Origin: Squalus acanthias
Lineage: Eukaryota
NCBI GenBank assembly: GCA_030390025.1
Contig: CM059433.1
Location: 137,144,001-137,208,000 of the forward strand
DNA length: 64,000 nt
Reading direction: 5' to 3'
Part shown: positions 4,755 to 61,865 of the stretch, piece after piece
How the letters are laid out: every line of letters starts with the position of its first letter
How positions within the stretch are numbered: the first letter of the stretch is position 1
Program-made: the position numbers and the translations under genes
The notes under the pieces: model-generated
What the model saw: the letters and a program-made list of their open reading frames with translations, nothing else
What the model was told of the DNA's origin: nothing
The model's database searches: none

Positions 4755-5974
4755 CGGAAGAGGATACAAATAACTTCCCAGAAATGCTAGGGAACCAAGG
4801 GTCTACTGAGAAGGAGGAATTAAAGGAAATTAGTATTAGTAAAAAAATAGTGCTGGAGAAATTAATGGGACTGAAAGCCGATAAATCCCTAGGGCCTGAT
4901 AATTAGCATCCCAGAGTACTAAAAGAGGTAGCCATGGAAATAGTGGATGCATTGGTTGTCATTTTCCAAAATTCTATAGATTATGGAACAGTTCCTGCAG
5001 ATTGGAGGGTGGCAAATGTAACCCCAGTATTTAAAAAAGGACGGAGAGAGAAAACAGGGAACTACAGACCGGTTAGCCTAACATCAGTAGTGGGGAAAAT
5101 GCTCGAGTCTATGATAAAGGATGTGATAACAGGACACTTAGAAAATATCAACGGGATTAGACAAAGTCAACATGGATTTATGAAAGGGAAATCGTGTTTG
5201 ACAAACCTACTGGAGTTTTTTGAGGATGTAACTGGTAGAATGGATAAGGGAGAACCAGTGGATGTGGTGTATTTGGATTTTCAGAAGGCCTTTGATAAAG
5301 TCCCACATAAGAGGTTAGTGTGCAAAATTAAAGCACATAGGATTGGGGGTAATATACTGGCATGGATTGAAAATTGGTTAAGAGACAGGAAACAGAGAGT
5401 AGGAATAAATGGGTCTTTTTCAGGGTGGCAGGCGGTGACTAGTGGGGTACCGCAGGGATCAGTGCTTGGGCCCCAGCTATTCACAATATATATCAATAAT
5501 TTGGATGAGGGAACCAAATGTAATATTTCCAAGTTTGCTGACGACACAAAACTAGGTGGGATTGTGAGTTGTGAGGAGGATGCAAAGAGGCTTCAAGGCA
5601 ATTTAGACAAGTTGAGTGAGTGGGCAAATATATGACAGATGCAGTATAACATGGATAAATGTGAAGTTATCCACTTCGGTAGGAAAAACAGAAAGGCAGA
5701 GTATTATTTAAATGGTGGTAGATTGGGAAATGTTGATGTACAAAGGGACCTGGGTGTCCTTGTACACCAGTCACTGAAAGCAAACATGCAGGTGCAGCAA
5801 GCAGTTATGAAGGCAAATGGTATGTTGGCCTTCATTGCAAGAGGATTTGAGTACAGGAGCAAGGATGTCTTACTACAGTTATACAGGGCCTTAGTGAGAC
5901 CACACCTGAAATACAGTGTGCAGTTTTGGTCTCCTTACCTAAGAAAGGATATGTAGAATTCGCAATATATCGCC

Positions 5975-7168
5975 ATGACTCTCCATTTAAAGGAAATTAT
6001 AGCAGAGTTAGAGAAACATGCAAAGACGGTAAATGCCCTGATTTGGGAAGATCGGAATGCATCCGATCAAGCTGCGCAGAATGAGGTGTGCGTGCTTTAC
6101 GGGGCGTGGTTACTGGGCGAGGGCCGCAGTAATTTGGAGGATTTAAAACAAGGTTTGGTCCCGTCCTGGATAAGTAACAAACACCTGCGGGCGCTCCACC
6201 CTTTTCAGAACGCATTAAGCCCGTGCCAGCTCAGGCTAGCTTCAGAAGCATACCCAGTCCCCGTGGACTGTGGACGATCAAACCATACTATCATGGGTAT
6301 AGTACTACGTATGCCGGTTTTGGGCGACACAGCAAAGCCCGCCCCGGTGTATCGGGTAGAGAACATTGGTGTCATTCAGGGGGGAGCCCATATTCGCTAT
6401 GCAGCGGTTCCACCTTACGTCATCCGCTGGGAGCAAACGATGACAGGTACAGATCTCTCTGGTTGTCGTGGCAGGGGAGCACACATAATACTGTGTCCCC
6501 AGCACTTGAATGCCTTTTTAACACCACAGTGCGGGTTCAGAACGGCTGGCGCCAAGTCCATGAATTGCACCATGGAGGCAATGGCACAAGATCATGTGCC
6601 TCCGCAGGTAGCATACATCGGGGGTGGAACATATTGTGTTACCACTGCAGCGCAACACTACCAGCATGGAAACCGTAGCCGGTGTCCGGTGAGTGACAGC
6701 AGTTTCTGTTTCAAACCCAGGGCGGAAGTTCAAGTAGCACAACAGCGAATTGTCCCAATCCCTGAACCATCCACTGTTCATCTGACAGTAAAAGAGAATT
6801 TCACCGACTTGCAGCGATTCGTCGCGCATTTCGGATACCTCATTCCCCCTCTCCCTGAACACCTCACCAAGCTTTTAAAAGCCGTCACGGTGTCACAAAA
6901 ACATTTTTACACACTAGAGCAGAAAACTGTCGAGATAGGGACCGACATTCTGGATATAGTAATTCCACCGTGGTGGAATCTGTTCACCAATATTGAAGTA
7001 CCTTCATGGATCAGAATAGCCTCCTACATTTTAGTTGTATGCCAAGTTTTTATTGTAGTGTACCTATTGGTCGTACATTGTAAGAGAGGCAAACGCCTCA
7101 CCAAGCACGAAAACACGGGAGAGTGGCGAGAACGTTACGTGCGCGTGCACGATGAAAGCACCGTGTGA
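5975..7168 (+). CDS. N-terminally truncated envelope glycoprotein, class I F-type (paramyxovirus F / lokiretrovirus Env-like)
   Basis: 397 open codons; Cys-rich block MPVL...VYRVENIG...VPPYVI...DLSGC...ILCPQ...QC...NC; five N-x-S/T sequons; Trp-rich juxtamembrane segment; TM IASYILVVCQVFIVVYLLVVHC; short tail; located just upstream of PPT and LTR. Confidence 0.8.
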   Translation: MTLHLKEIIAELEKHAKTVNALIWEDRNASDQAAQNEVCVLYGAWLLGEGRSNLEDLKQGLVPSWISNKHLRALHPFQNALSPCQLRLASEAYPVPVDCGRSNHTIMGIVLRMPVLGDTAKPAPVYRVENIGVIQGGAHIRYAAVPPYVIRWEQTMTGTDLSGCRGRGAHIILCPQHLNAFLTPQCGFRTAGAKSMNCTMEAMAQDHVPPQVAYIGGGTYCVTTAAQHYQHGNRSRCPVSDSSFCFKPRAEVQVAQQRIVPIPEPSTVHLTVKENFTDLQRFVAHFGYLIPPLPEHLTKLLKAVTVSQKHFYTLEQKTVEIGTDILDIVIPPWWNLFTNIEVPSWIRIASYILVVCQVFIVVYLLVVHCKRGKRLTKHENTGEWRERYVRVHDESTV

Positions 7169-21137: not shown

Positions 21138-22021
21138 CTTTTTTTTAATTCATTCATGGGATGTGGGTGTTGCTGGCAAGACGAGCATTTATTGCCAATC
21201 CCTAATTGCTTTTGAGAAGGTGGTGGTGAGCCGCCTTCTTGAACCATTGCAGTCCATGTGATGAAGGTACTCCCACAGTGCTGTTAGGGAGGGAGTTCCA
21301 AGATTTTGACCCAGTGACGATGAAGGAACGGCGATATATTTCCAAGTCAGGACGGTGTGTGACTTGGAAAGGATCTTGGAGGTGATGGTGCTCCCATGCG
21401 TCTGCTGCCCTTGTCCTTCTAGGTGGTAGAGGTCGTGGGTTTGGGAGATGCTGTTGAAGAGGACTTGGAGAGTTGCTGCAGTGCATCTTGTAGATGGTAC
21501 ACTACAGCCATGGATCGCCGGTCGTGGAGGGAGTGAATGTTTAAGGTGGTGGATGGGGTGCCAATCAAGCGGGCTGCTTTGTCCTGATGGTGTCGAGCTT
21601 CTTGAGTGTTGTTGGAGCTGCACTCATCCAGGCAAGTGGAGAGTATTCCATCACACTCCTGACTTGTGCCTTGTAGATAGTGGAAAGGCTTTGGGGAGTC
21701 AGGAGGTGAGACACTCGCCGCAGAATACCTAGCTTCTGACCTGCTCTTGTTGCCACAGTATTTATGTGGCTGGTCCAGTTAAGTTTCTGGTCAATGGTGA
21801 CCCCCAGGATGTTGATGGTGGAGAATTCGGCGATGGTAATTCCGTTGAATGTCAAGGGGCAGTGGTTAGACTCTCGCTTGTTGGAGATAGTCATTGCCTG
21901 GCACATGTGTGGCGCGAATATTACCTGCCACTTATCAGCCCAAGCCTGAATGTCGTCCAGGTCTTGTTGCATGCGGGCATAGAGTGCTTCATTATCTGAG
22001 GAGTTGCGAATGGCACTGAAC
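21138..22021 (-). mobile_element. Family-B LINE 3' fragment
   Basis: MQQDLDDIQAWADKWQV...YKAQVRSVMEYSPLAWM; A-rich tail at ~21138. Confidence 0.9.
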
Positions 22022-22254
22022 AGTGCAGCGCAGTTCGATTGCAGCTACACATCCTTGGAGATATTCTCCTTCCATTGGTACAAAGAGAGCCCAAGTCGAC
22101 GGTTGGGGCAGGTTATGACCAGCATAAGTAGCGGCAAAGATGCGTTTGGACATTTGGAGATTGTTTTTGAAACTACCGAAAAGCAAAGCTATTTCGCTTT
22201 CAGAAAGATGGAAGAGCCGGACTACGCGGTCTATAATTGTATATTCAAGGATCT
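22022..22254 (+). pseudogene. Orphan antigen-receptor V gene segment fragment (TCR alpha/delta V-like), lacking leader and most of FR1
   Basis: Open frame SAAQFDCSYTSLEIFSFHWYKESP...MEEPDYAVYNCIFKD: first Cys 22040, WY 22076, D-x-A-V-Y-x-C with second Cys 22238; the Cys residues are 66 apart; followed directly by an RSS. Confidence 0.85.
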
Positions 22255-22293
22255 CACTGTGACAGCAATGAGCGGCACCACTGTACAAAAACC
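22255..22293 (+). promoter_or_regulatory. V(D)J recombination signal sequence, 23-bp spacer
   Basis: Heptamer CACTGTG (22255-22261), exactly 23 nt, consensus nonamer ACAAAAACC (22285-22293); starts 14 nt after the second Cys codon. Confidence 0.9.
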
Positions 22294-22760
22294 TGGCCTC
22301 GGGGAGACACGCCCTTTCTGATCTCCCCGCCTCGGCCTTTCTGATCTCTCCCATCCCCCACCCCCGTCCAACCTCTCCCTCCCTCTCGCTGCCATCTGGT
22401 GCCGCTGGCCTTCTTGTACGGCAGCCAGTCAGCCTCTCAATCTGGCTGGCTGCCAGCCAGGAAAAGGAGACAAAAAATTTAAATGAGGACCTGCTGTTAA
22501 ATTTGGCAGGACCTCTGGGTTACCTGCATTTCTGGGTTTCCAGGCCACTGCGACGACCCCGCTCCCTCCCTGGCTCCCTGTAAATATCAGGGCCAATATC
22601 TGTTATTCCACTCTGTTAAGAATTTTACCATTTTGGGTATACTTTCTTTCATTATTGTTTTCCCCCAAATATAACACTGCACATTTCTCTGCATTGAACT
22701 GCGTCTGCCCCATGCTAACTTGTCGACCCTGCAATCTCCTAATTCTTCTTTTTAGAGTTT

Positions 22761-23220
22761 CAGCTGTGGCTCAGTTGGTAGCACACTTGCCTCTGAGTCA
22801 GAAGGTTGTGGGTTCAAGTCCCACTCCAGGGACTTGAGCGCATAAAGCTAGGCAGACACTCCAGTGCAGTGCTGAGGGCATGCTGCACTGTCGGAGGTGC
22901 CGTCTTTCGGATGAGACGTTAAACCGAGGCCCCATCTGCTCTTTCAGGTGGACGTAAAAGATCCCATGGCCCTATTTCGAAGAAGAGCAGGGGAATTATC
23001 CCCGGTGTCATGGTCAATATTTATCCCTCAACCAACATAACAAAAACAGATAATCTGGTCATTATCACATTGCTGTTTGTGAGAGCTTGCTGTGCGCAAT
23101 TGGCTGCCACGTTTCCAACGTTACAACAGTGATTACACTTCAAAAAGTACTTAATTGGCTGTAAAGCGCTTTGGGACGTCCAGTGGTCGTGAAAGGCGCG
23201 ATAGAAATGCAAGTCTTTCT
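22761..23220 (+). mobile_element. tRNA-derived SINE, DeuSINE/SacSINE1-like, full length
   Basis: A box TGGCTCAGTTGG, B box GGTTCAAGTCC; core gaggtgccgtctttcggatgagacgttaaaccgagg...aaagatcccatggc recalled as the Deu domain; L2-like 3' tail. Confidence 0.82.
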
Positions 23221-23684
23221 GTTCATCTTCTTTGTAGTTTGTAATTCCCCCTAATCAGTAAACTTCCATTATCATTCTTTTTATATCTATATCTCCTCTT
23301 GTGACAATGTCCAAATCAGGTATTATAAGTGGAAAACAAGAATTTCACATGAAAGTATTAACCAGTGTACTAACAATAGGTAACAGAGGAATTTCAATCT
23401 GTGAAGATTGCTGTTGTGTTGATAAATGGCATTCCACTGAATAAAAGAGTGATCTGATCATTTGGGGTTTGATTTGCTCATTTATTCTGTGGGCTTTGGG
23501 CTTCTATTAGTGTTTCATGTAACCTTCTATTAGCTCTTCTACTCACTTAATAAAGATTATGTGCAATAATGAATTAATGCTGGTTCAGAATATTATTCAT
23601 CTTTCCCTCTGAAATATTCCCATAGATTTAGCATTGATTCCTTTTGACTTGTACATTATTTGAAGATAAAGATACAATACTCAC

Positions 23685-23789
23685 AGCTTTAACTTGCACT
23701 TTGTTGAAAGAATACCGAAGTGTGTCAACTCCTTCTGCTTCCTCCTTTGAAATCTCTACTTCATACTTATTCAGGATACTATATGCTTC
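23685..23789 (-). CDS. DNAH8: Axonemal dynein heavy chain exon (105 nt)
   Basis: tgtag|GAA...GCT|gtgagt, phase 0/0; translates to EAYSILNKYEVEISKEEAEGVDTLRYSFNKVQVKA, close to recalled DNAH8 EAYAILNRFEVEVTKEESEAVDTLRYSFNKLQSKA. Not in the ORF track. Confidence 0.93.
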
Positions 23790-24886
23790 CTACATGGAAA
23801 CCAGTAATAAAGCAACAATAGATAAAATCTGGTTAAGATATGATTTGTACCTGTGCTAACCTCTATCAATATTAATTAAACACCAGATCTAATGGAAATT
23901 ATTTATTAAGTAAGCAATTGACAATACTAGACAACTGGATCGTAGGAACATAAGGGTTGCTAGACAAAAAAAAAACAAGGTCCATCTAGCTGCCTTTCCA
24001 CCATCCTGGTAGTCACATGGTACAACAATAATGGAGTTGTTGACTAAACAGGGCAATCAATTTCTATCAATTAGCCTACAACGGTGACTAGAGGGTTAAC
24101 ATTCATCTTTTACTAATATCAGTGGACTACTTGTTGTATTACTTGTATTGAGCCATCAGGTAGATATAAACTATTTCCTCTGGTGGGGAAATCCAGAACA
24201 AGTTGTCACAATCTTAAAATCAGAGCTAGGCCATTTAGTAGTGCAATCAGGAAGGATTTTTTCACACAGAAGGATATCTAAAAATGCTCTCCCCCAAAAA
24301 GTTGTGCATGCTGTTTGAAATGTTTAAGACTGAGATCAATAGATTTTTGTGAGCTACGGTTATCATAGAATCATAGAATGTGCCCTAATCAAGGGATAAG
24401 GATCCAAGGCTTCTTGTTTGTGGGTCAACTGTAAAAAACTCCAACTCCTTCTCCTCTTTCATTTGCTTTCCCTGCAAATTTATTTGAGGTCGTTGAAATC
24501 CCCCATGATTATGAATCTGCGGGGGCAAAACTGGTCTTCCGCGCTAATGCAAAACGAGCGATAGCAAAACGGCAGCAATTTTGTTTTCCATTCCCTCATT
24601 TTCTTGCTGATGCTCTGTGCATTGCTGTGCAGGCAATTTAATATTCTCTTATAATTTAATTATGTTTGCTTTATTTTTGTCACAAATTTTATTATTACTT
24701 TCTATTACCTTTTCTAATCTCTGAGTATTTATGTTATCTTTATTTCTTTTTGTACTCCGAACTTTGCTTCGTCCCATCTTTCTCTTATCCTGTCCAAAGA
24801 TTGAGTAATTACAGACAGCCTCACTTACATAAACTAAGAGCAAGTCTTGGTGGGCAACCCTGAAGCAGGAGCTTGTATATCTGTGC

Positions 24887-38581: not shown

Positions 38582-39560
38582 TATTTTTATTTTATTCGTT
38601 TATGGGATGTGGGTGTCGCTGGCAAGGCCAGCATTTATTGCCCATCCCTAATTGCCCTTGAGAAGGTGGTGGTGAGCCACTTTCTTGAACCGCTGCAGTC
38701 TGTGTGGTGATGATACTCCCACAGTGCTGTTAGGAAGGGAGTTCCAGGATTTTGACCCAGCGACGATGAAGGATCGGCGATATACTTCTAAGTCAGGATG
38801 GTGTGTGACTTGGAGGGGAACTTGGAGGTGGTGGTGTTCCCATGCGTCTGCTGCCCTTCTAGGTGGAAGAGGTCGCAGGTTTGGGAGGTGCTGCCGAAGA
38901 AGTCTTGGTGAGTTGCTGCAGTGCATCTTGTAGATGGTACACCCTGCAGCCACGGTATGCCAGTGGTGGAGGGAGTGAATGTTTAAGGTGGTGGATGGGG
39001 TGCCAATCAAACGGGCTGCTTTGTCCTGGATGGTGTCCAACTTCTTGAGTGTTGTTGGAGCTGCACTCATCCAAGCAAGTGGAGAGTATTCCATCACACT
39101 CTTGACGTGCCTTGTAGATGGTGGAAAGGCTTTGTGGAGTCAGGAGGTGAGACACTCGCCGCAGAACACCCAGCCTCTGACCTGCTCTTGTTGCCACAGT
39201 ATTTATGTGGCTGGTCCAGTTAAGTTTCTGGTCAATGGTGACCCCCAGGATGTTGATGGTGGGGGATTCAGCGATGGTAATGCCTCTAAATGTCAAGGGG
39301 CGGTGGTTAGACTCTCGCTTGTTGGAGATAGTCATTGCCTGGCACTTGTGTGGCGCGAATGTTACCTGCCACTTATCAGCCCAAGCCTGAATGTCATTCA
39401 GGTCTTGTTGCATGCGAGCATGGACTGCTTCATTATCTGAGGAGTTGTGAATGGCACTGAACACTGTGCAGTCATCAGCGAACATCCCCATTTCTGACCT
39501 TATGTTGGAGGGAAGGTCATTGCTGAAGCAGTTGAAGATGTTTGGGCCTAGGTCACTGCC
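38582..39560 (-). mobile_element. Family-B LINE 3' fragment inserted in a SINE
   Basis: LGPNIFNCFSNDLP...FADDCTVF...YSPLAWMSAAPT. Confidence 0.9.
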
Positions 39561-45857: not shown

Positions 45858-46169
45858 AGTAAATAGATATAGAATCGCCAAAGCATATATAGATAGAGAA
45901 CAAAGCATGTGTACCTTACAATTGCAGACCACTAAATTAAATCATCCTGACTATCTGCCGAGGTGTGATAAAGTTAATCAGGTCAGCCAGGAAGGTACCA
46001 CATCAAAGACATAGCAAGATACAACTGAGACAATGAGGTGTAGTCGCAGGGGTTCTAACGTGTCAAAAGCTGCCGTCTGTATGTAAAACAAAAAGCTTTA
46101 ACATTTTTACTTTTGTTGTGCGACCTCTCAATTTTGTCCACCCCAGTCCAACACCGGCATCTCCGCATC

Positions 46170-48840
46170 ATGACCACTATCGACACCACAAACTGCCGGC
46201 TCAAAGTGGAGAGAATCGCCAAGAAGATCGCGCATATCGACACCGACATCAAGTATCTACAGAGATGCAAGAAAGCAGACAAGATCCCGAAAGGACTACA
46301 GATCACGAACCCACTCAAGTCGACATACAACACAGACTACGCTGAGAGACTCTGCCGTCGTACCTCTCGCACACTCCTCAACCATCTCGTACACCAGCTC
46401 TACAGCAAACGCCACAACCTCGAAACCAAGATAGAGTCCATGCTCTCAGCCTGTGCTCAGGACACAGCAGACCAGTTACGAGACACCACCAAACAGACGA
46501 GGCAACGGAACTACGCTGCCTACATGCGCATCAAGAACAGGAAGCTTGAGAAACTCGGCATCACCACCAGCAGCAACCAAGCCTCCCCCGGTACCACGGC
46601 TGCAACCACAGGGAAGTCCATCGTCAACTTGTCCGACCATACCCTTCAACCAGACGAAATCGAAGTTCTCGCCCTAGGGCTCAAGTTCTGCCCAACCACC
46701 AAAATGGACCCCATCGGTCTCGCGGCAGACACGGAGGAATTCATCAGGAGAATGAGGCTCCGGGAATACTTCCACAAATCCCAAGATGTCAGCAACAAAC
46801 CCAATGAGACAATCAATGATCCAGAACAGCAGACAGAGGGACTCGCAGTGCAGCAACCGAAGAAAAAAGAGTCAAACTGGACCCCTCCGGAGGGTCGCTG
46901 CCCCAAGCTTGACATGTATGCTCAAGCTGTCAGGAGATGCATCAACGCCAGATTCATCAGCCGCACTCACAAGACAGTCCAGAATGTCACCCGAGCACAA
47001 CGCAACGCCATCCACGCTCTCAAGACCAACCGCAACATTGTCATCAAACCAGCGGACAAAGGAGGAGCCATCGTCATACAGAACAGAACGGACTATTGTA
47101 AAGAAGCATACCGACAACTGGACAACCAGGAACACTACAGACAGCTACCCGCAGATCCGACCAAAGAACACACCCGCCAACTCAATAGACTGATCAAGAC
47201 CTTCGATCCAGACCTTCAAAACATCCTACGCGCTCTCATCCCACGTACTCCCCGCGTGGGAGACTTCTACTGCCTCCCAAAGATACACAAAGCCAACACA
47301 CCCGGACGTCCTATCGTATCAGGCAATGGAACCCTGTGTGAGAACCTCTCTGGATACGTCGAGGGCATACTGAAACCCATCGTACAGGGAACCCCCAGCT
47401 TCTGTCGCGATACTACAGACTTCTTACAGAAACTCAGCACCCACGGACCAGTTGAACCAGGAACACTCCTTGCCACGATGGACGTATCGGCACTCTACAC
47501 CAGTATCCCCCACGATGACGGCATCGCTGCAACAGCCTCAGTACTCAACACCAACAACAGCCAATCTCCAGACGCCATCCTACAACTCATCCGCTTCATC
47601 CTTGACCACAATGTCTTCACCTTCGACAACCATTTTTTTACCCAAACACACGGAACAGCCATGGGGACCAAATTCGCACCCCAATACGCCAACATCTTCA
47701 TGCACAAGTTCGAGCAAGACTTCTTCGCTGCACAGGACCTCCAGCCAACGCTGTACACCAGATACATCGACGACATTTTCTTCCTTTGGACCCATGGCGA
47801 AGGATCACTGAAAAGACTACACGATAACATAAACAAGTTCCATCCCACCATCAAACTCACCATGGACTACTCCTCAGAATCGATTTCATTCCTGGACACA
47901 CGAATCTCCATCAAAGACGGACACCTCAGCACTTCACTCTACCGCAAGCCCACGGACAACCTCACGATGCTCCACTTCTCCAGCTTCCACCCTAACCATG
48001 TTAAAGAAGCCATCCCCTATGGACAAGCCCTGCGAATACACAGGATCTGCTCAGACGAGGAGGAACGCGATGGACACCTACGGACGCTGAAAAACGCCCT
48101 CGTAAGAACGGGATATGACGCTCGACTCATCGATCGACAGTTCCGACGGGCCACAGCGAAAAATCGCATAGACCTCCTCAGAAGGCAAACACGGGACACA
48201 ACCAACAGGGTACCCTACGTCGTCCAGTACTTCCCCGGAGCGGAGAAACTACGCCATGTTCTTCGCAGCCTTCAACATGTCATCGATGACGACAAACGCC
48301 TCGCTAAGGCCATCCCCACGCCTCCACTACTTGCCTTCAAACAGCCGCCTAACCTCAGAAGTACCATCGTTCGCAGCAAATTACCCAGCTTTCAGGATAA
48401 CAGCGACCACGACACCACACAACCCTGCCACGGCAAACTCTGCAAGACATGCCAGATCATCAACACAGATACCACCATCACACGTGAGGACACTAACCAC
48501 CAGGTACATGGTACATACTCATGTGACTCGGCCAACGTTGTCTACCTCATACGTTGCAGGAAAGAAGGCATGGTACATCGGCGAGACCATGCAGACACTG
48601 AGACAACGTATGAACGAGCACCGCGCAACAATCGCCAGACAGGATTGTTACCTCCCAGTCGGGGAACACTTCAGCAGTCAAGGACATTCAGCCTCGGATC
48701 TGCGGGTAAGCGTTCTGCAAGGCAACCTTAGAAACACACGACAACGCAAAATCATCGAGCAGAAACTGATAGCCAAGTTCCGCACTCATGAAGACGGTCT
48801 CAACCAGGATCTTGGGTTTATGTCACGATACATGACGTGA
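46170..48840 (+). pseudogene. Penelope RT + GIY-YIG endonuclease ORF with a single frameshift at ~48565
   Basis: ATG 46170; IKPADKGGA, LPKIHK, GRPIVS, MDVSALYTSI, GTAMG, RYIDDIF, YRKPT; Cys linker PCHGKLCKTC; NVVYLIRC / WYIGET...RMNEH...EQKLI in shifted frames. Confidence 0.93.
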
Positions 48841-49210: not shown

Positions 49211-50745
49211 TTTCAAATAAAACTGTTGGACTATAACCTGGTGTTGTGCGACCTCTCAATTTTGTACAGGTGTGGTGCCAGAGGACTGGAGACTACTAAC
49301 GTTGTACTGTTGTTTAAAAAGGGAAAAAGGGATAGACCAAGTAATTACTGGCCAGTCAACCTAACCTCGGTGGTGGGCAAATTATTGGAAAAATTCTGAG
49401 GGGCAGTATTAATCGTCAGTTAGAAAGGCAAGGATTAATCAAGGACAGTCAGCATGGATTTGTTAAGGGACAGTCGTATCTGACTAACTTGATTGACATT
49501 TTTGAGGAGGTAACATGGAGGGTCGATGAGGGTAGTGTGTTTGATGTAGTCTACATGGATTTTAGCAAGGTTTTTGACAAGCCCCCACATGACAGAATGG
49601 TCAGAAAAGTAAAAGCCCATAGGATTCAAGGGAAAGTGGCAAGTTGGATCCAAAATTGGCTCAGTGGCAGGAAGCAAAGGGTAATGATCGACAGGTGTTT
49701 TTGTGACTGGAAGGCTGTTTCCAGTGGGGTTCTGCAGAGTTCAGTACTGGGTCCCTTGCTTCTTGTGGTATATATCAATGATTTAGACTTCAATGTAGGG
49801 GACATGATTAAGAAGTTTGCAGATGATACAAAAATTGGCAGTGCGGTTGATATTGAGGAAGAAAGCTCTAGACTGCAGGAAGATATCAATGGATTGGTCA
49901 GGTGGACAGAAAAGTGGCAAATGGATTTCAATCTGGAGAAGTGTGAGGTAATACATTTGGGGAGGGCTAACAAGGCAAGAGAATACACAATAAATGGTAA
50001 GATACTGAGATGTGTAGAGGAACAGAGGAACTTTGGAGTGCATGTCCACAGATCCCTGAGGGCAACAGGACAGATAGATAAGGTGGTTAAGAAGGCATAC
50101 AGGATAGTTTCCTTTATTAGCTGAGGCAGAGAATATAAGAGCAGGGGGAGTACCTTCACCACACGGACTGCAGCAGTTCAAGAAGGTGGCTCACCACCAC
50201 CTTCTCAAGGGCAATTAGGGATGGGCAATATATGCTGGCCTTGCCAGTGACGCCCATTTCACATGAATGAATAAAAAAAAAACAGGGGAGTGGGATTAAT
50301 TGGATAGCTTTACCAAAGAGCCAGCACAGGCACCATGAGCCAAATGTCCTCCTTCTGTGCTGTATCACTCTATGATAGGACCCCGATATGCATATATTTA
50401 TGAGGCGTACCTGAGTCAGGCAGATGCCTCAACCATTTGACTTTAAAACAATCACAGGATGGTGTTAGTGCGATGAGTCTACAGGGAACTTAATTCTCAT
50501 TTAGTCCAGTTTCCGCCCGGCGGAGGGAATTAAAATACCATCGTAAGTGTTTGTTGAAAAGCCTCATTTCAAGCCAAGGCACATAGTAAAGGAAACTCCC
50601 AAGTTAGTAGAAGAGATTATGTAAATTAGGGAGCATTATTTCACTGATGTCAAGTTTGGGTTCTAAAAGCCTGAAAAACTGTAGGAGAAAAAAAAGAGTC
50701 AAACAAATGTGTAGAAGACATGCTTTGAAAGAGAAGGACACGTAC

Positions 50746-50981
50746 CTCAATGGGTCCCAAAGTCATATCCATCTGTATCTCATTCTGTCGTATTTCTGCT
50801 AAAGACTCCATGGCAAATCTAACATCATCCAGATCCTGAATAGGTCGTGCCAAATTTTTCATTTGTTCACTGATAAAAGCTGTTATTGCTGACATTTTTC
50901 CCTTGTACTGTTCATTCAAGAACCGACAAAGTACGATTTTCCAAGCTTTGGCTTCCACCAGAAGAGCCATTTTTATGGGTT
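50746..50981 (-). CDS. DNAH8: Axonemal dynein heavy chain exon (236 nt)
   Basis: ccttag|AA CCC ATA AAA ATG...ATT GAG|gtacgt; (E)PIKMALLVEAKAWKIVLCRFLNEQYKGKM...RPIQDLDDVRFAMESLAEIRQNEIQMDMTLGPIE. The EAKAWK, DLDDVRFAME and QMDMTLGPIE motifs fit DNAH8 better than DNAH5 as recalled. Confidence 0.93.
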
Positions 50982-57600: not shown

Positions 57601-58689
57601 TAGTGATTGGTTGGTAAGTATTAAGGTTTTTTTCTCTCTAAATTAAGACAGTGATTGAAACTAGGAGCGGGAAACTATAACATACTGTATTAAATTTATA
57701 TCTTAACTAGTTAAGCTAATTAATATAACTATAAATAATCGTTGATTAAAATCTTTAACTAATTAAATAAATAAAATAAGCCAAGACTAAGATATGGCAG
57801 GGCAGGTTATGAGTCTGGACTGCAGTATGTGGGAGTTTGTGGAAAACGAGACTGTCCTAGCAAACACGTCCGCAGGAGATGTCTTCATCTTGAATCTCTC
57901 CGGCTCAGAGTCATTGAGCTGGAGTGCAAATTGGAGACACACCAATACATAAGGGAGGGGGAGGAATTTCTGGACAGTTTTATCCAGAATACAGTCACAT
58001 CCCAGAGGAAAGCACAAGTTCAAAAAGGGAGGGTGTGACTGTTTGGGAGATGATTATCGGGGATTTAGGAGAGGTTGAGAAGGAGGTCCCACAGACACTG
58101 GTCCTGTCCAACAGGTACGATGTACTCGCTACCTGTGAGGACAAGGAGAAAGACTGCAGGGAGGACAACCACAATGCAGACCAAGGCACCGTGGCTCAGA
58201 AGGCTGTCCAAGGGGGGGAAGAACAGAATAGAAATGTGGTAGTGATAGGGGACTCTATAATTAGGGGGATAGATATCATCCTCTGCAGCCAAGAACGAGA
58301 ATCCCGAAGGGTGTGTTGCCTACCCGGGTAAGGGATATCTCACGGCAGCTGGAAAGGAACTTGGAAAGAGAGGGTGGAAATCCAGTTGCCGTGGTCCATG
58401 TTGGAACAAATGACAATCGTAGGAACAGGGAGGAGGTCCTGCTAAAGAGAATCAGGAGTCAGGATCTAAATTAAAAAGCAGGACCTCGAGGGTAATAATC
58501 TCTGGATTATTGCCTGAGCCACGTGCAAATTGGCAAAGAAGCAGACAGATCAGGAGAATTAACATGTGGCTAAAGGGCTGGTGTGGGAAAGAGGGGTTCC
58601 TTTTCATGGGACACTGGCATCAGTTCTGGGACAGGAAGGAGCTGTACCGATGGGAAAGGCTCCATCTGAACTGGGATGGGACCCGTGTT

Positions 58690-61600
58690 TATTTTATTTG
58701 TTTATGGGATGTGGGCGTCGCTGGCAAGGCCAGCATTTATTGCCCATCCCCAATTGCCCTTGAGAAAGTGGTGGTGAGCTGCCTTCTTGAACCGCTGCAG
58801 TCCGTGTGGTGAAGGTACTCCCACAGTGCTGTTAGGTAGGGAGTTCCAGGATTTTGACCCAGCAACGATGAAGGATCAGCGATATACTTCTAAGTCAGGA
58901 TGGTGTGTGACTTGGAGGGGAACTTGGAGGTGGTGGTGTTTCCATGCGGCTGCTGCCCTTGTCCTTCTAGGTGGAAGAGGTGGGGTTTGGGAGGTGATGC
59001 CGAAGAAGCCTTGGTGAGTTGCTGCAGTGCATCTTGTAGATGGTACACACTGCAGCCACGGTACGTCGGTGGTGGAGGGAGTGAGTGTTTAAGGTGGTGG
59101 ATGGGATGCCAATCAAGCGGGCTAAGTTGTCCTGGATGGTGTCGAGCTTCTTGAGTGTTGTTGGAGCTGCACTCATCCAGGCAAGTGGAGAGTATTCCAT
59201 CACACTCCTTACTTGTGCCTTGTAGATGGTGGAAAGGCTTTGGGGAGTCAGGAGGTGAGACACTCGCCGCAGAATACACAGCCTCTGACCTGCTCTATTT
59301 AACACAGTATTTATGTGGCCAATGGTAGCCCCAGGATGTTGATGGTGGGGGATTCGGTGATGGTAATGCCATTGAATGTCAAGGGGATGTGGTTAGGCTC
59401 TCGCTTGTTGTAGATAGTCATTGCCTGGCACTTCTGTGGCACGAATGTTACCTGCCACTTATCAGCCCAAGCCTGAACGTCGTCCAAGTCTTTTTGCATG
59501 CGGGCATGGACTACTTCATTATCTGAGGAGTTGTTAATGGCGCTGAACACTGTGCAGTCATCAGCGAACATCCCTATTTCTGACCTTATGTTGGAGGGAA
59601 GGTCATTGCTAAAGCAGCTGAAGATGGTTGGGCCTAGGACACTGCCCTGAGGAACTCCCGCAGCGATGTCCTGGGGCTGCGATGATTGACCTTCAACCAC
59701 CACAACCATCTTCCTTTGTGCTAGGTATGACTCCAGCCAGTGGAGCGTTTTCCCCCTGATTCCCATTGACTTCAGTTTTACTAGGGCTCCTTGATGCCAC
59801 ACTCAGTCAAATGCTGCCTTGATGTCAAGGGCATTCGCTCTCACCTTACCTCTGCAATTCAGCTCCTTTGTCCATGTTTGGACCAAGGCTGTAATGAGGT
59901 CGGGAGCTGAGTGGTCTTGGCGGAACCCAAACTGGGTATCAGTGAGTATGTTTTTGCTGAGGAAGTGCCGCTTTATAGCATTGTCGATGACACCTTCCAT
60001 CACTTTGCTGATGATTGAGAGTAGACTGATGGGGCGGTAATTGGCCGGGTTGGATTTGTCATGCTTTTTGTGAACAGGACATACCTGGGCAGTTCTCCAC
60101 ATTGTCGGATAGATACCAGTGTTGTAGCTGTACTGGAACAGCTTGGCTAGAGGCGCGGCTAGTTCTGGAGCACAAGTCTTCAGCATGATAGCCGGGATGT
60201 TGTCAGGGCCCATAGCCTTTGCTGTATCCAGTGCACCCAGCCGTTTCTTGATATCACGTGGAGTGAATCGAATTAGCTGAAGAATGGCTTCTGTGATGGT
60301 GGGGACCTCAGGAGTAGGCCGATATGGATCATCCACACGGCACTTCTGGCTGAAAATGGTTGCAAATGCTTCAGCCTTGTGTTTTGCACTCCATTATCAT
60401 TGAGGATGGAGATAATCATGGAGCCTCCTCCTCCCGTTAGTTGTTTAATGGTCCACCACCATTCCGACTGGATGTGGCAGGACTGCAGAGCTTTGATCTG
60501 ATCCGTTGGTTGTGGGATCACTTAGCTCTGTCTACAGCATGCTGCTTCCGCTTTTTAGCATGCATGTAGTCCTGTGTTGCAGCTTCCCCAGTTTGGCAAC
60601 TCATTTTTAGGTACGCCTGGTGCTGCTCCTGGCATGCTCTTCTACACTCCTTCTTGAACCAGGGTTGGTCTCCTGGCTTGGTGGTAATGGTAGAGTGAGG
60701 GATATGCCAGGCCATGAGGTTACAGATTGTGGTGGAATACAATTCTGCTGCTGCTGATGGCCCACAGCGCCTCATGGATGCCCAGTTTTGAGCTGCTAGA
60801 TCTGTTCTGAATCTATCCCATTTAGCACGGTGGTAGTGCCACACAACACGATGGAGGGTGTTCTCAGTGTGAAGACAGGACTTCGTCTCCACAAGGACTG
60901 TGCGTTGGTCACTGCTGCCAATGCTGTCATGGACAGATGCATCTGCGACAGGTAGATTGGTGAGGACGAGGTCAAGTAGGTTTTCCCCTCTTGTTGGTTC
61001 TTCACCAGCTGTCGCATCCCCAGACTGGCAGTTATGTCCTTCAGGACTCGGGCAGCTCGGTCAGTAGTGGTGCTACCGAGCCACTCTTGGTGATGGACAT
61101 TGAAGTCCCCCACCCAGAGTAGATTCTGTACCCTTGCTACTCTCAGTGCTTCTTCCAAGTGGTGTTCAACATGGAGGAGTACTGATTCATCAGCTGAGGG
61201 AGGGCGATAGGTGGTAATCAGTAGGAGGTTTCCTTGCCCATGCTTGATCTGAAGCCTTGAGACTTCATACGGTCTGGAGTCAATGTTGAGGACTCCCAGG
61301 GCCACTCCTTCCCGTCTGTATACCACTGTGCCACCACCCCTGGTGGGTCTGTCCTGCCGGTGGGACAGGACATACCCAGGGATGGTGGTGGAGGAGTTTG
61401 GGACATTGGCTGAAAGGTTTGATTCTGTGAATATGACTATGTCAGGCTGTTGCTTGACTAGTCTGTGAGACAGCTCTCCCAATTTTGGCACAAGTCCTCA
61501 GATGTTGGTGAGGAGGACTTTGCAAGGTCGACTGGGCTAGGTGTGCCGTTGCCATGTCCGTAGCCGGTGCCGACGTCGATGCCGGGTGGTCCGTCCGGTT

Positions 61601-61865
61601 TCATTCTTATTATGTTTCGTAGCGGTTAGTTACAACTGAGTGACTTGCTGGGCCATTTCAGAGGGCAGTTAAGAGTCAACAACATTGCTGTGGGTCTGGA
61701 GTCACATATAGGCCGGACCAGGTAAGGACGGCAGATTTCTTTCCCTGAAGGACATTAGTGAACCAGATGGATTTTTACGACAATTCAATAGTTTCATGGT
61801 TACCATTGCTGATACTAGCTTTTTATTCCAGATTTATTTAATTAACTGAATTTAAATTACCCAGC
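58690..61865 (-). mobile_element. Near full-length family-B LINE (SINE-like leader + APE + RT, no ORF1)
   Basis: [58 protein letters not shown]; stops and frameshifts; inserted into CR1 ORF1. Confidence 0.9.

What the first reader, a model, noticed from the sequence alone, without database searches (positions are those of the whole stretch)
22022..22320. Orphan, unrearranged TCR-like V segment with an intact 23-RSS inside a dynein intron
Seen: a stop-free frame with the V-set hallmarks (F-D-C, H-W-Y, D-Y-A-V-Y-N-C; Cys spacing 66) ends 14 nt after the second Cys in CACTGTG-23 nt-ACAAAAACC. Leader and most of FR1 are missing, and its 5' side is fused to the truncated end of a minus-strand LINE. 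Many CpGs are retained, suggesting it is recent. Established: this is the germline layout of a RAG substrate, and 23-spacer RSSs flank TCR V and IgH V segments. Inference: a TCR alpha/delta-like V was moved out of its locus, by LINE template switching or 5' transduction from an antisense germline V transcript, or by repair-associated capture. That leaves a strong ectopic RAG site in DNAH8. No D, J or C segment was seen in the window.
Basis: partly seen in the sequence, partly recalled or inferred. Interest (0 to 1): 0.88.

Follow-up and report, generated by a model that had tools for sequence, protein, structure and literature searches.

The report
Dead T-cell-receptor V fragment beside a LINE
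A broken piece of a shark T-cell-receptor V gene, still carrying a perfect recombination signal, sits next to a jumping-gene copy inside a dynein gene intron; it is a stray pseudogene of a known general kind and not a working receptor gene.

Summary
At 22023-22254 (+) there is a stop-free V-set frame: Cys codons at 22040 and 22238 (66 apart), with F-D-C, H-W-Y and D-Y-A-V-Y-N-C. Fourteen bases after the second Cys comes CACTGTG, a 23-base spacer and ACAAAAACC (22255-22293). This is the only exact RSS in the window; shuffles expect none. The best solved-structure matches are TCR alpha chains. Leader and about 17-30 residues of FR1 are missing. The V abuts, in opposite orientation, the 5'-truncated end (22022) of an endonuclease/RT LINE copy (21139-22022, minus). 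Two minus-strand exons match consecutive residues of a DNAH8-like dynein heavy chain, so the V lies antisense in a dynein intron. There is no other V, and no 12-RSS with an intact CAC, in the 64 kb.

My reading is a non-functional V "orphon" fragment. It most likely arrived with the LINE (twin priming on a V transcript, or template switching), or was cut by the LINE. 5' transduction is excluded.

"Recent" and "strong ectopic RAG site" are not shown.

Public contigs give mixed support. One contig from another study spans the LINE/V junction and the RSS at about 95% identity. Two individuals of the window's species show only V paralogs at about 82-87% identity.

This is a new member of known kinds. 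Interest is moderate to low.

The parts
21139..22022 (-). 5'-truncated copy of a non-LTR retrotransposon (LINE). It holds the 3' 884 nt, the RT C-terminus from just after the FADD box, and an A-run at its 3' end (T8 on the + strand at 21140-21147).
   Evidence: Self-BLAST gives 90.4% to 38585-39471, 87.0% to 58688-59557 and 83.2% to 669-1508. The longer copy at 58688-61865 has Exo_endo_phos and RVT_1 domains. The other copies continue past 22022 (loose-end consensus in X2, X6 and X7).
22023..22030 (.). Junction letters of uncertain origin. They fit the V frame (S-A-A) and share GTGCAG with the LINE 2 nt out of register.
   Evidence: Alignment A1. Paralog V contigs begin to align at 22028-22031, and P0002 aligns from 22031.
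22031..22254 (+). V-exon remnant running from the end of FR1 to 14 nt past the second Cys. It is TCR alpha/delta-like and stop-free, but lacks the leader and most of FR1.
   Evidence: Cys codons at 22040 and 22238.
22255..22293 (+). 23-RSS: heptamer CACTGTG (22255-61), 23-nt spacer (22262-84), nonamer ACAAAAACC (22285-93).
   Evidence: 0 mismatches, and 0 of 100 shuffles give a match.
22294..22390 (+). GC-rich (66%), CpG-rich (o/e 0.89), low-copy stretch behind the RSS. It is probably the native 3' flank of the V that came with it.
   Evidence: CpG. One search gives depth 84 in X1 against about 25-65 in the single-copy bins 23247-23888, and the X7 contig runs to 22358. P0002 stays alike through VQKPGL, to about 22300.
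22388..22402 (+).
   Evidence: 2 matches in the window against 0.61 expected; 14 of 100 shuffles reach 2, so it is weak by itself. Unchecked first-stage notes say V segments of this genome's TCR loci are each followed by such a site.
23631..23789 (-). Dynein heavy-chain exon. The coding part runs from about 23789 down to about 23675, ending at a GTGAGT donor.
   Evidence: PDB 9fqr_I3 residues 1385-1423, E 7.8e-12. Pfam DYH2-5-8_CC E 0.01.
50722..50973 (-). The preceding dynein heavy-chain exon.
   Evidence: PDB 9fqr_I3 residues 1309-1386, E 9e-31; DNAH5 (8j07) E 1e-16. Pfam DYH2-5-8_CC E 0.011.

Best explanation
This is a dead fragment of a TCR alpha/delta-type V gene segment. It comprises about 230 nt of V exon, the intact germline 23-RSS and roughly 100 nt of 3' flank. 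It lies outside any antigen-receptor locus, antisense in an intron of a DNAH8-like axonemal dynein gene. It abuts the 5'-truncated end of a LINE copy head to head, in opposite orientation. I think it most likely entered the site in the same event as the LINE. While the LINE cDNA was made from one side of the target break, a second reverse transcription from the other side copied a V-locus transcript that ran through the RSS (twin priming). Alternatively, the RT switched from the LINE RNA to an antisense V transcript. The two incomplete cDNAs were then joined at 22022/22023. The fragment cannot encode a V domain, because the leader and most of FR1 are absent. Its RSS is a sequence-perfect RAG substrate, but nothing shows that it is ever cut. 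Shown: the anatomy, the homology and the gene context. Inferred: co-insertion, the RNA intermediate, and RAG inertness or activity.
For: V identity and RSS. The V homology starts within 1-9 nt of the exact point where the LINE homology stops. The V is truncated at its 5' end, as an unfinished cDNA would be. The LINE is also 5'-truncated and has its A-run at the far end. The opposite orientation of LINE and non-LINE parts is the signature given for twin priming in passages of PMC13174262. No 5' half of the V lies on the other side of the LINE or anywhere else in the 64 kb: all 34 tblastn hits with E<0.1, from 22 V-type proteins, fall on 21965-22303. The V plus its flank stands out as a CpG-rich island (o/e 0.80-0.95) between CpG-poor repeats (0.35-0.45) and CpG-free intron. 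This fits a foreign piece about 370 nt long. An independent 364-nt contig (X7, another study) covers 21993-22358 with 16 mismatches and 2 gaps. It ends 30 nt (k-1) into the LINE, so the same junction exists outside this assembly. Contigs of the same species hold V paralogs at about 82-87% identity. Some have word depth 593-653 against about 20-45 for single-copy DNA, so a multi-copy donor family exists.
Against: No target-site duplication brackets the composite: one search found no repeat of 7 nt or more next to both ends. The right-hand end of the V-derived piece is not defined. The LINE is not L1, and twin priming or template switching has not been shown for its clade in anything I read. A germ-line V-locus transcript is assumed, not shown; no listed run holding the stretch is on record as RNA. 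The window's own V letters were not found in X2 (97% of the run read) or in the 55% of X1 that was read, although both hold the neighbouring intron exactly or with 1 mismatch. This is unexplained.
Confidence: 0.45

Rival explanations
1. A V orphon was already in the intron, moved there by segmental duplication, DNA capture at a break, or as a retrocopy of its own. Later a LINE inserted into its FR1, with loss of the upstream V part through a target-site deletion.
For: V orphons moved as DNA are well known; the chromosome 9 TRBV orphons appear in passages of PMC4657264. [quoted passage not shown] This also explains why the V ends exactly at the LINE. The low-copy flank 22294-22390 and a CTCF-like motif at 22388-22402 suggest that native flank came along.
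Against: It needs two independent rare events at one spot plus a deletion. No V 5' part lies left of the LINE. What lies there is another RT-like repeat (RVT_1 E 0.042). The foreign CpG-rich piece looks only about 370 nt long, which is short for a DNA-level duplication.
Confidence: 0.3
2. The placement is an assembly error, or a variant private to the sequenced individual. The LINE-V-RSS piece is real DNA but does not belong in this dynein intron in the species at large.
For: Both sides of the piece are repeats (depths). X2 lacks the window's V letters: bin depth 21.2 is accounted for by two paralog contigs of 17 and 3.73. So does the part of X1 that was read. Word shares are only 0.60 (X1) and 0.25 (X2-X5). 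The X7 contig does not reach unique intron, so it confirms the junctions but not the location.
Against: The X7 contig reproduces both junctions independently. A 0.9-kb LINE is short for confusing a long-read assembly. Contigs show presence, not absence, as the tool's own caveat says.
Confidence: 0.12
3. The RSS is a live ectopic RAG target, or the V is used. Under this reading lymphocytes cut at 22254/22255 and cause deletions or translocations in the dynein gene, or trans-rearrangement to a TCR J.
For: The RSS is sequence-perfect: CAC heptamer start, 23-nt spacer, consensus nonamer. The abstract of PMC12711392 states that the first three heptamer letters are strictly conserved and that RSS-like sequences allow off-target activity.
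Against: The window has no partner 12-RSS with an intact CAC; the two hits at 3 or fewer mismatches lack it. RAG2 is guided by H3K4me3 (abstract of PMC5175335). An intron of an axonemal dynein gene is unlikely to be open in lymphocytes (my inference). The V lacks the leader and FR1, so no productive chain could result. Human orphon V segments gave next to no rearrangements (passages of PMC4657264).
Confidence: 0.05

Closest known systems
Orphon V gene segments (for example the human TRBV orphons on chromosome 9; the IGHV and IGKV orphons are from my recall)
   Same: A V segment with its RSS lies outside the receptor locus, is unrearranged and is not used. The chromosome 9 TRBV orphons served as negative controls and were essentially unseen among rearrangements (PMC4657264, passages).
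   Different: Known orphons are, from my recall, whole V genes carried in large duplicated blocks. This one is a fragment of about 370 nt, truncated in FR1, fused head to head with a LINE, and found in a cartilaginous fish.
Chimeric LINE insertions made by twin priming or template switching (PMC13174262)
   Same: A 5'-truncated LINE has a non-LINE sequence at its 5' junction. Opposite orientation of the parts is taken there as the mark of twin priming, and mRNA parts in antisense orientation are described (passages).
   Different: That catalogue concerns mammalian L1, whereas this is another endonuclease/RT LINE of a shark. No target-site duplication was found. The captured piece is an unspliced germline V with its RSS, which is not a normal mRNA.
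Germline TCR alpha/delta V gene segments
   Same: It has the V-set hallmarks, TCR alpha as best structural relatives, a 23-RSS placed 14 nt after the second Cys, and a CTCF-like motif behind the RSS, as first-stage notes report for V segments of this genome's TCR loci.
   Different: It has no leader, no intron and most of FR1 is gone. There is no J or C nearby, and it sits inside a dynein gene on the opposite strand.
Cryptic or off-target RSS sites
   Same: It is an RSS outside the receptor loci that RAG could in principle recognise (abstracts listed).
   Different: Cryptic RSSs are chance look-alikes, usually little more than CAC. This one is a true RSS by descent, with a full consensus.

Membership tests
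Antigen-receptor V gene segment (germline RAG substrate) | V-set domain hallmarks: two Cys about 65-70 residues apart, Trp after CDR1, and the D-x-A-x-Y-x-C motif | tested here: met
   Cys at 22040 and 22238 (66 codons apart), HWY, and DYAVYNC. Pfam V-set E 5e-4, below the cut-off. TCR alpha chains are the best PDB matches.
Antigen-receptor V gene segment (germline RAG substrate) | Complete coding unit: leader exon, intron, and full FR1 | tested here: not met
   Homology starts at residue 12-18 of mature TCR alpha chains and at residue 33 of P0002. Upstream of that is LINE sequence.
Antigen-receptor V gene segment (germline RAG substrate) | RSS (heptamer, 12- or 23-nt spacer, nonamer) directly behind the coding end | tested here: met
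   22255-22293 with 0 mismatches; 0 of 100 shuffles match.
Antigen-receptor V gene segment (germline RAG substrate) | Lies in a locus with partner J (12-RSS) and C | tested here: not met
   No 12-RSS with an intact CAC at 3 or fewer mismatches and no other V-like stretch in the 64 kb. C domains were not searched for separately.
Orphon (V outside the main locus) | Located away from the receptor locus, among unrelated genes | tested here: met
   Dynein exons lie at 23.6-23.8 kb and 50.7-51.0 kb on the other strand. That the TCR loci are on other pieces of the genome rests on unchecked first-stage notes.
LINE chimeric insertion by twin priming | A 5'-truncated LINE with its 3' tail, and a non-LINE part at its 5' junction in opposite orientation | tested here: met
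LINE chimeric insertion by twin priming | Target-site duplication around the whole composite | tested here: inconclusive
   No repeat of 7 nt or more adjoins both ends. The right end is unknown, and this LINE clade may not make regular duplications.
LINE chimeric insertion by twin priming | An empty site, lacking both parts together, in other individuals or species | not testable with these tools
   Only contigs were available, and the single read-laying run was used. The listed joints do not show one, but 2654 joints were not shown.
DNAH8 (axonemal dynein heavy chain 8) | Exons best matching DNAH8 rather than its paralogs | tested here: inconclusive
   The best match is a 4730-aa chain of 9fqr (E 9e-31 and 7.8e-12) that the table labels with another protein's name. 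DNAH5 is second at 1e-16. Pfam DYH2-5-8_CC also hits. That the 4730-aa chain is DNAH8 is my recall of its length.

The most novel reading that the evidence does not exclude
In this shark, retrotransposon machinery copies germline V-locus transcripts that run through the RSS and scatters V+RSS (+CTCF-site) cassettes around the genome. This copy would then be a young, still segregating insertion: present in the reference individual and one other sample, absent from two sequenced individuals. It would illustrate a route by which RAG targets, and perhaps the many dispersed receptor clusters of cartilaginous fish, get seeded at new places. Unchecked first-stage notes of intronless leader-V segments with retained RSS elsewhere in this genome point the same way.
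Probability: 0.15. Interest if true: 0.65.

Novelty: new member of a known kind. Interest (0 to 1): 0.35.

Why it matters
If the co-insertion reading is right, this is a clean example of a retrotransposon carrying a true recombination signal to a new chromosomal place. That bears on two questions. One is how V/RSS units spread, which is relevant to the dispersed cluster-type loci of cartilaginous fish. The other is how genomes tolerate perfect RSSs outside the receptor loci. As it stands it is a single pseudogene fragment with no sign of function. Its main practical value is as a natural test site: one can ask whether an isolated consensus 23-RSS in silent chromatin is ever cut in thymocytes. 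It could also serve as a presence/absence marker.

Tried and rejected
- **LINE splitting a whole V:** rejected for this window. tblastn of 22 V-type proteins, including P0002 with a full FR1, found nothing outside 21965-22303 below E 0.1. The left flank of the LINE is another RT-like repeat.
- **V inserted into a LINE copy:** rejected. 22294-22765 has no similarity to the LINE's continuation. It only has old (60-68%) matches of 22599-22750 to a different repeat family.
- **RAG cut at the breakpoint:** the other LINE copies read CACTGTG exactly where this copy breaks. The break falls inside that heptamer-like string and not at its border, so I take it as coincidence.
- **5' transduction:** rejected, because the LINE is truncated in its RT.
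- **High-copy repeat carrying a V:** rejected for this exact sequence. The unique-looking depth and the contig ends fit a low-copy piece. The high-depth unitigs (593, 653) differ from the window at many places and are V paralogs.
- **Target-site duplication:** none found.
- **Close protein relatives:** The search for homologous proteins returned nothing for the fragment and only P0002 itself for P0002. The metagenome scan with alignment A2 matched 77 stretches, none confirmed, so the DNA of P0002's 1265-nt contig could not be fetched.
- **The search of earlier findings by sequence:** blank.
- **tRNA scan of 22300-23300:** 0 genes.
- **Next dynein exon below 23600:** not recognised by eye among 73 minus-strand stop-free stretches of 28 aa or more. 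The intron therefore runs to the window's start or the exon is short.
- **Not done:** I computed no formal RSS information-content score (no model was at hand). I opened no supplementary files. Supplements of PMC13174262 may list antisense mRNA/LINE chimeras that bear on the comparison.

Full report
**What is in the sequence.** The + strand frame from 22004 to 22321 is stop-free. From about 22023 it reads as the body of an immunoglobulin-superfamily V domain: SAAQFDCSY...FHWYKESPSRRLGQVM...GHLEIVFETTEKQSYFAFRKMEEPDYAVYNCIFKD. The two Cys codons are at 22040 and 22238, 66 codons apart. Fourteen bases after the second Cys codon comes CACTGTG (22255-61), then 23 bases, then ACAAAAACC (22285-93). 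This is the only exact match to the heptamer-23-nonamer pattern on either strand of the 64 kb, and none of 100 shuffles gave one. With three mismatches allowed, only one other poor hit appears. The two 12-spacer hits both lack the CAC start.

**Homology of the V part.**
- Pfam's V-set model matches at E 5e-4 and 20.6 bits, below the curated 26 bits, as expected for a domain without its first strands.
- Among solved structures the five best matches are TCR alpha chains (E 2.1e-5 to 8.9e-5), and the sixth is a Fab heavy chain. The alignments start at residue 12-18 of the mature chains.
- A profile of the fragment plus its closest relative again gives mostly TCR alpha among single-domain chains. 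Multi-domain antibody constructs rank first by summed score.
- A full HMMER scan of 1.84 billion representative proteins gave 19 hits at E<=1e-3. The named ones I looked up are unnamed multi-V predictions from squamate genomes.
- The closest hit, P0002, is 54% identical. It is a 144-aa prediction from a 1265-nt JGI metagenome contig. It has a full FR1 and, like the window, reads straight through an RSS (LTVT...VQKPGL).
No named shark V was available for comparison.

**The left junction.** 21139-22028 is a copy of a non-LTR retrotransposon on the minus strand.
- It is 90.4%, 87.0% and 83.2% identical to copies at 38585-39471, 58688-59557 and 669-1508.
- The longer copy at 58688-61865 has an endonuclease (Exo_endo_phos) and RT (RVT_1) domains.
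- This agrees with the first-stage note s1-889133 that a LINE lies there.
- The other copies continue beyond the point that corresponds to 22022, and hundreds of contigs in X2, X6 and X7 do the same (loose ends behind 22022).
- The copy next to the V therefore stops inside its RT, just after the FADD box. It keeps only 884 nt and ends at 21140-21147 in an A-run.
- V paralog contigs and P0002 start to align at 22028-22031. The two homologies thus meet within a few bases, in opposite orientation.

**The right side.**
- The V homology to paralogs runs to 22299-22300.
- 22294-22390 is 66% G+C with CpG o/e 0.89 and low copy number.
- From about 22391 a very high-copy repeat starts; 22599-22750 is an old fragment of another LINE family; 22760-23220 is a high-copy repeat, SINE-like by its tRNA-like head as I read it (ARAGORN found no tRNA there).
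- V plus flank has CpG o/e 0.80-0.95. The adjoining LINE has 0.45, the repeats to the right 0.35, and the next 410 nt of intron have no CpG at all.
- A CTCF-like motif (consensus from memory, 1 mismatch) lies at 22388-22402. Several unchecked first-stage notes say that V segments of this genome's TCR loci are each followed by such a site. If so, the V brought its own flank along.
- The foreign piece is then about 370-380 nt long.

**Gene context.**
- On the minus strand, 50722-50973 and 23631-23789 match residues 1309-1386 and 1385-1423 of one 4730-aa chain of entry 9fqr (E 9e-31 and 7.8e-12). DNAH5 is second (E 1e-16). Both stretches also hit Pfam's dynein 2/5/8 coiled-coil model.
- The table gives that chain another protein's name. 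From its length I take it to be DNAH8, but that is recall.
- I searched the two exons separately and did not join them.
- The V lies about 1.4 kb downstream of the second exon, on the opposite strand. More than 3000 residues of the dynein are still to come, so the V is in an intron. I did not recognise the next exon in the window.
- No other V-like stretch exists in the 64 kb.

**Public reads.** Only Logan contigs were available.
- X1 and X2 (organism A) hold the neighbouring intron 23194-23703 with 0 and 1 mismatches, so they are the window's species.
- Over the V they show only paralogs. Examples are a 469-nt contig on 22031-22299 with 48 mismatches, and unitigs with word depth 593 and 653 against about 20-45 for single-copy DNA. 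This points to a V family with many near-identical members.
- The bin depths are fully accounted for by these paralogs: in X2, 17 + 3.73 against 21.2. So the window's own V letters are absent from X2 (97% of the run read) and from the 55% of X1 that was read.
- Word shares are 0.60 (X1) and 0.25 (X2-X5).
- X7, from another study and without an organism name, has one 364-nt contig on 21993-22358 with 16 mismatches and 2 gaps. It ends 30 nt into the LINE, as a k=31 unitig should at a repeat border.
- The LINE/V and RSS/flank junctions therefore exist outside this assembly. Their place in the dynein intron, and their presence in all individuals, are not shown.
- Contigs show presence, not absence. 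I leave this as unexplained, with presence/absence polymorphism as one reading.

**Age.**
- Against that, the X7 copy is about 4-5% diverged.
- In addition, 38 of the 40 difference rows shown (413 in all; the other 2 lie outside the V) compare the window's V with paralog contigs. 28 of these have A/T in the window against G/C in the paralog and only 5 the reverse; 7 are of CpG type.
- This could be decay, or it could be a difference between V families. The age is open.

**How it got there.**
- 5' transduction is excluded by the truncated LINE.
- Passages of PMC13174262 state that template switching or RNA ligation gives LINE and non-LINE parts in the same orientation, and twin priming gives opposite orientations. 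They describe antisense-oriented mRNA/LINE chimeras without splicing features.
- The arrangement here fits twin priming on a sense V-locus transcript that ran through the RSS. The parts are in opposite orientation, both are 5'-truncated, and they meet head to head with the LINE tail at the outer end.
- The main rival is a pre-existing orphon cut by the LINE with a target-site deletion.
- I found no target-site duplication, which helps neither side.

**Function.**
- The fragment cannot make a V domain.
- Its RSS is perfect by sequence. However, RAG needs a 12-RSS partner, and none with an intact CAC is in the window.
- RAG also needs active chromatin: RAG2 binds H3K4me3 (abstract of PMC5175335).
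- Human orphon V segments were essentially unseen among rearrangements (passages of PMC4657264).
- "Strong ectopic RAG site" is therefore an untested inference. I give it about 5%.

**Literature seen.**
- Passages: PMC4657264 and PMC13174262.
- Listings and abstract starts only.
- I make no claim that such a case is absent from print. Among the 15 listed of 20 papers holding orphon + recombination signal sequence + T cell receptor, no title named a cartilaginous fish.

**Verdict.** This is a real, well-preserved but dead V+RSS fragment. It is an orphon-type pseudogene, probably a by-product of a LINE insertion. It is a new member of known kinds, with an open question about its population status.

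Noticed in passing
window 23226-23703: Besides the exact contig, X1 and X2 each hold a second contig type with 43 mismatches and 14 gaps at similar depth (24.7 and 18.9, against 18.9 and 15.2). Its left part does not match the window's SINE-like repeat at 22760-23220. It is either a deeply diverged haplotype or a roughly 9%-diverged duplicate of this dynein exon and intron.
   Followed up: no
window 39455-39470, 59541-59556 and 1495-1510 (other LINE copies): The LINE family reads CACTGTG (coding C-T-V just after the FADD box) exactly where the copy next to the V is broken off. The break lies inside this heptamer-like string, not at its border, so I take it as coincidence.
   Followed up: partly
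window 22067-22206 and 22027-22091 (reads): Unitigs of V paralogs with word depth 653 and 593 in X1, about 15-30 times single-copy depth. One V family of this species seems to have many near-identical members.
   Followed up: no
P0002 (JGI metagenome contig, 1265 nt): The closest known relative of the V is a gene call from a metagenome. It reads through its own RSS and lacks the second Cys (VYVYV). It is presumably host DNA of a cartilaginous fish in a microbiome sample. Its DNA could not be fetched.
   Followed up: partly
window 46059-48837: An uninterrupted 890-aa ORF with an RVT_1 domain (E 1.1e-8), followed in another frame by a 222-aa stretch without a Pfam hit. It looks like a young retroelement of another class. 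My impression that it is Penelope-like is recall and was not tested.
   Followed up: partly
window 5957-7165: A 403-aa stop-free frame in non-repeated DNA with a hydrophobic C-terminal stretch and no Pfam match at E<=1.
   Followed up: partly
window 22760-23220: A high-copy repeat, SINE-like by its tRNA-like head as I read it (ARAGORN finds no tRNA). 15 contigs in X1 and 28 in X2 join its end back to its start ('goes back 461'), so tandem copies exist elsewhere in the genome.
   Followed up: no
window 22411-22463: An imperfect palindrome inside a very high-copy repeat (word depth about 48,000 in X1), directly right of the CTCF-like motif.
   Followed up: no
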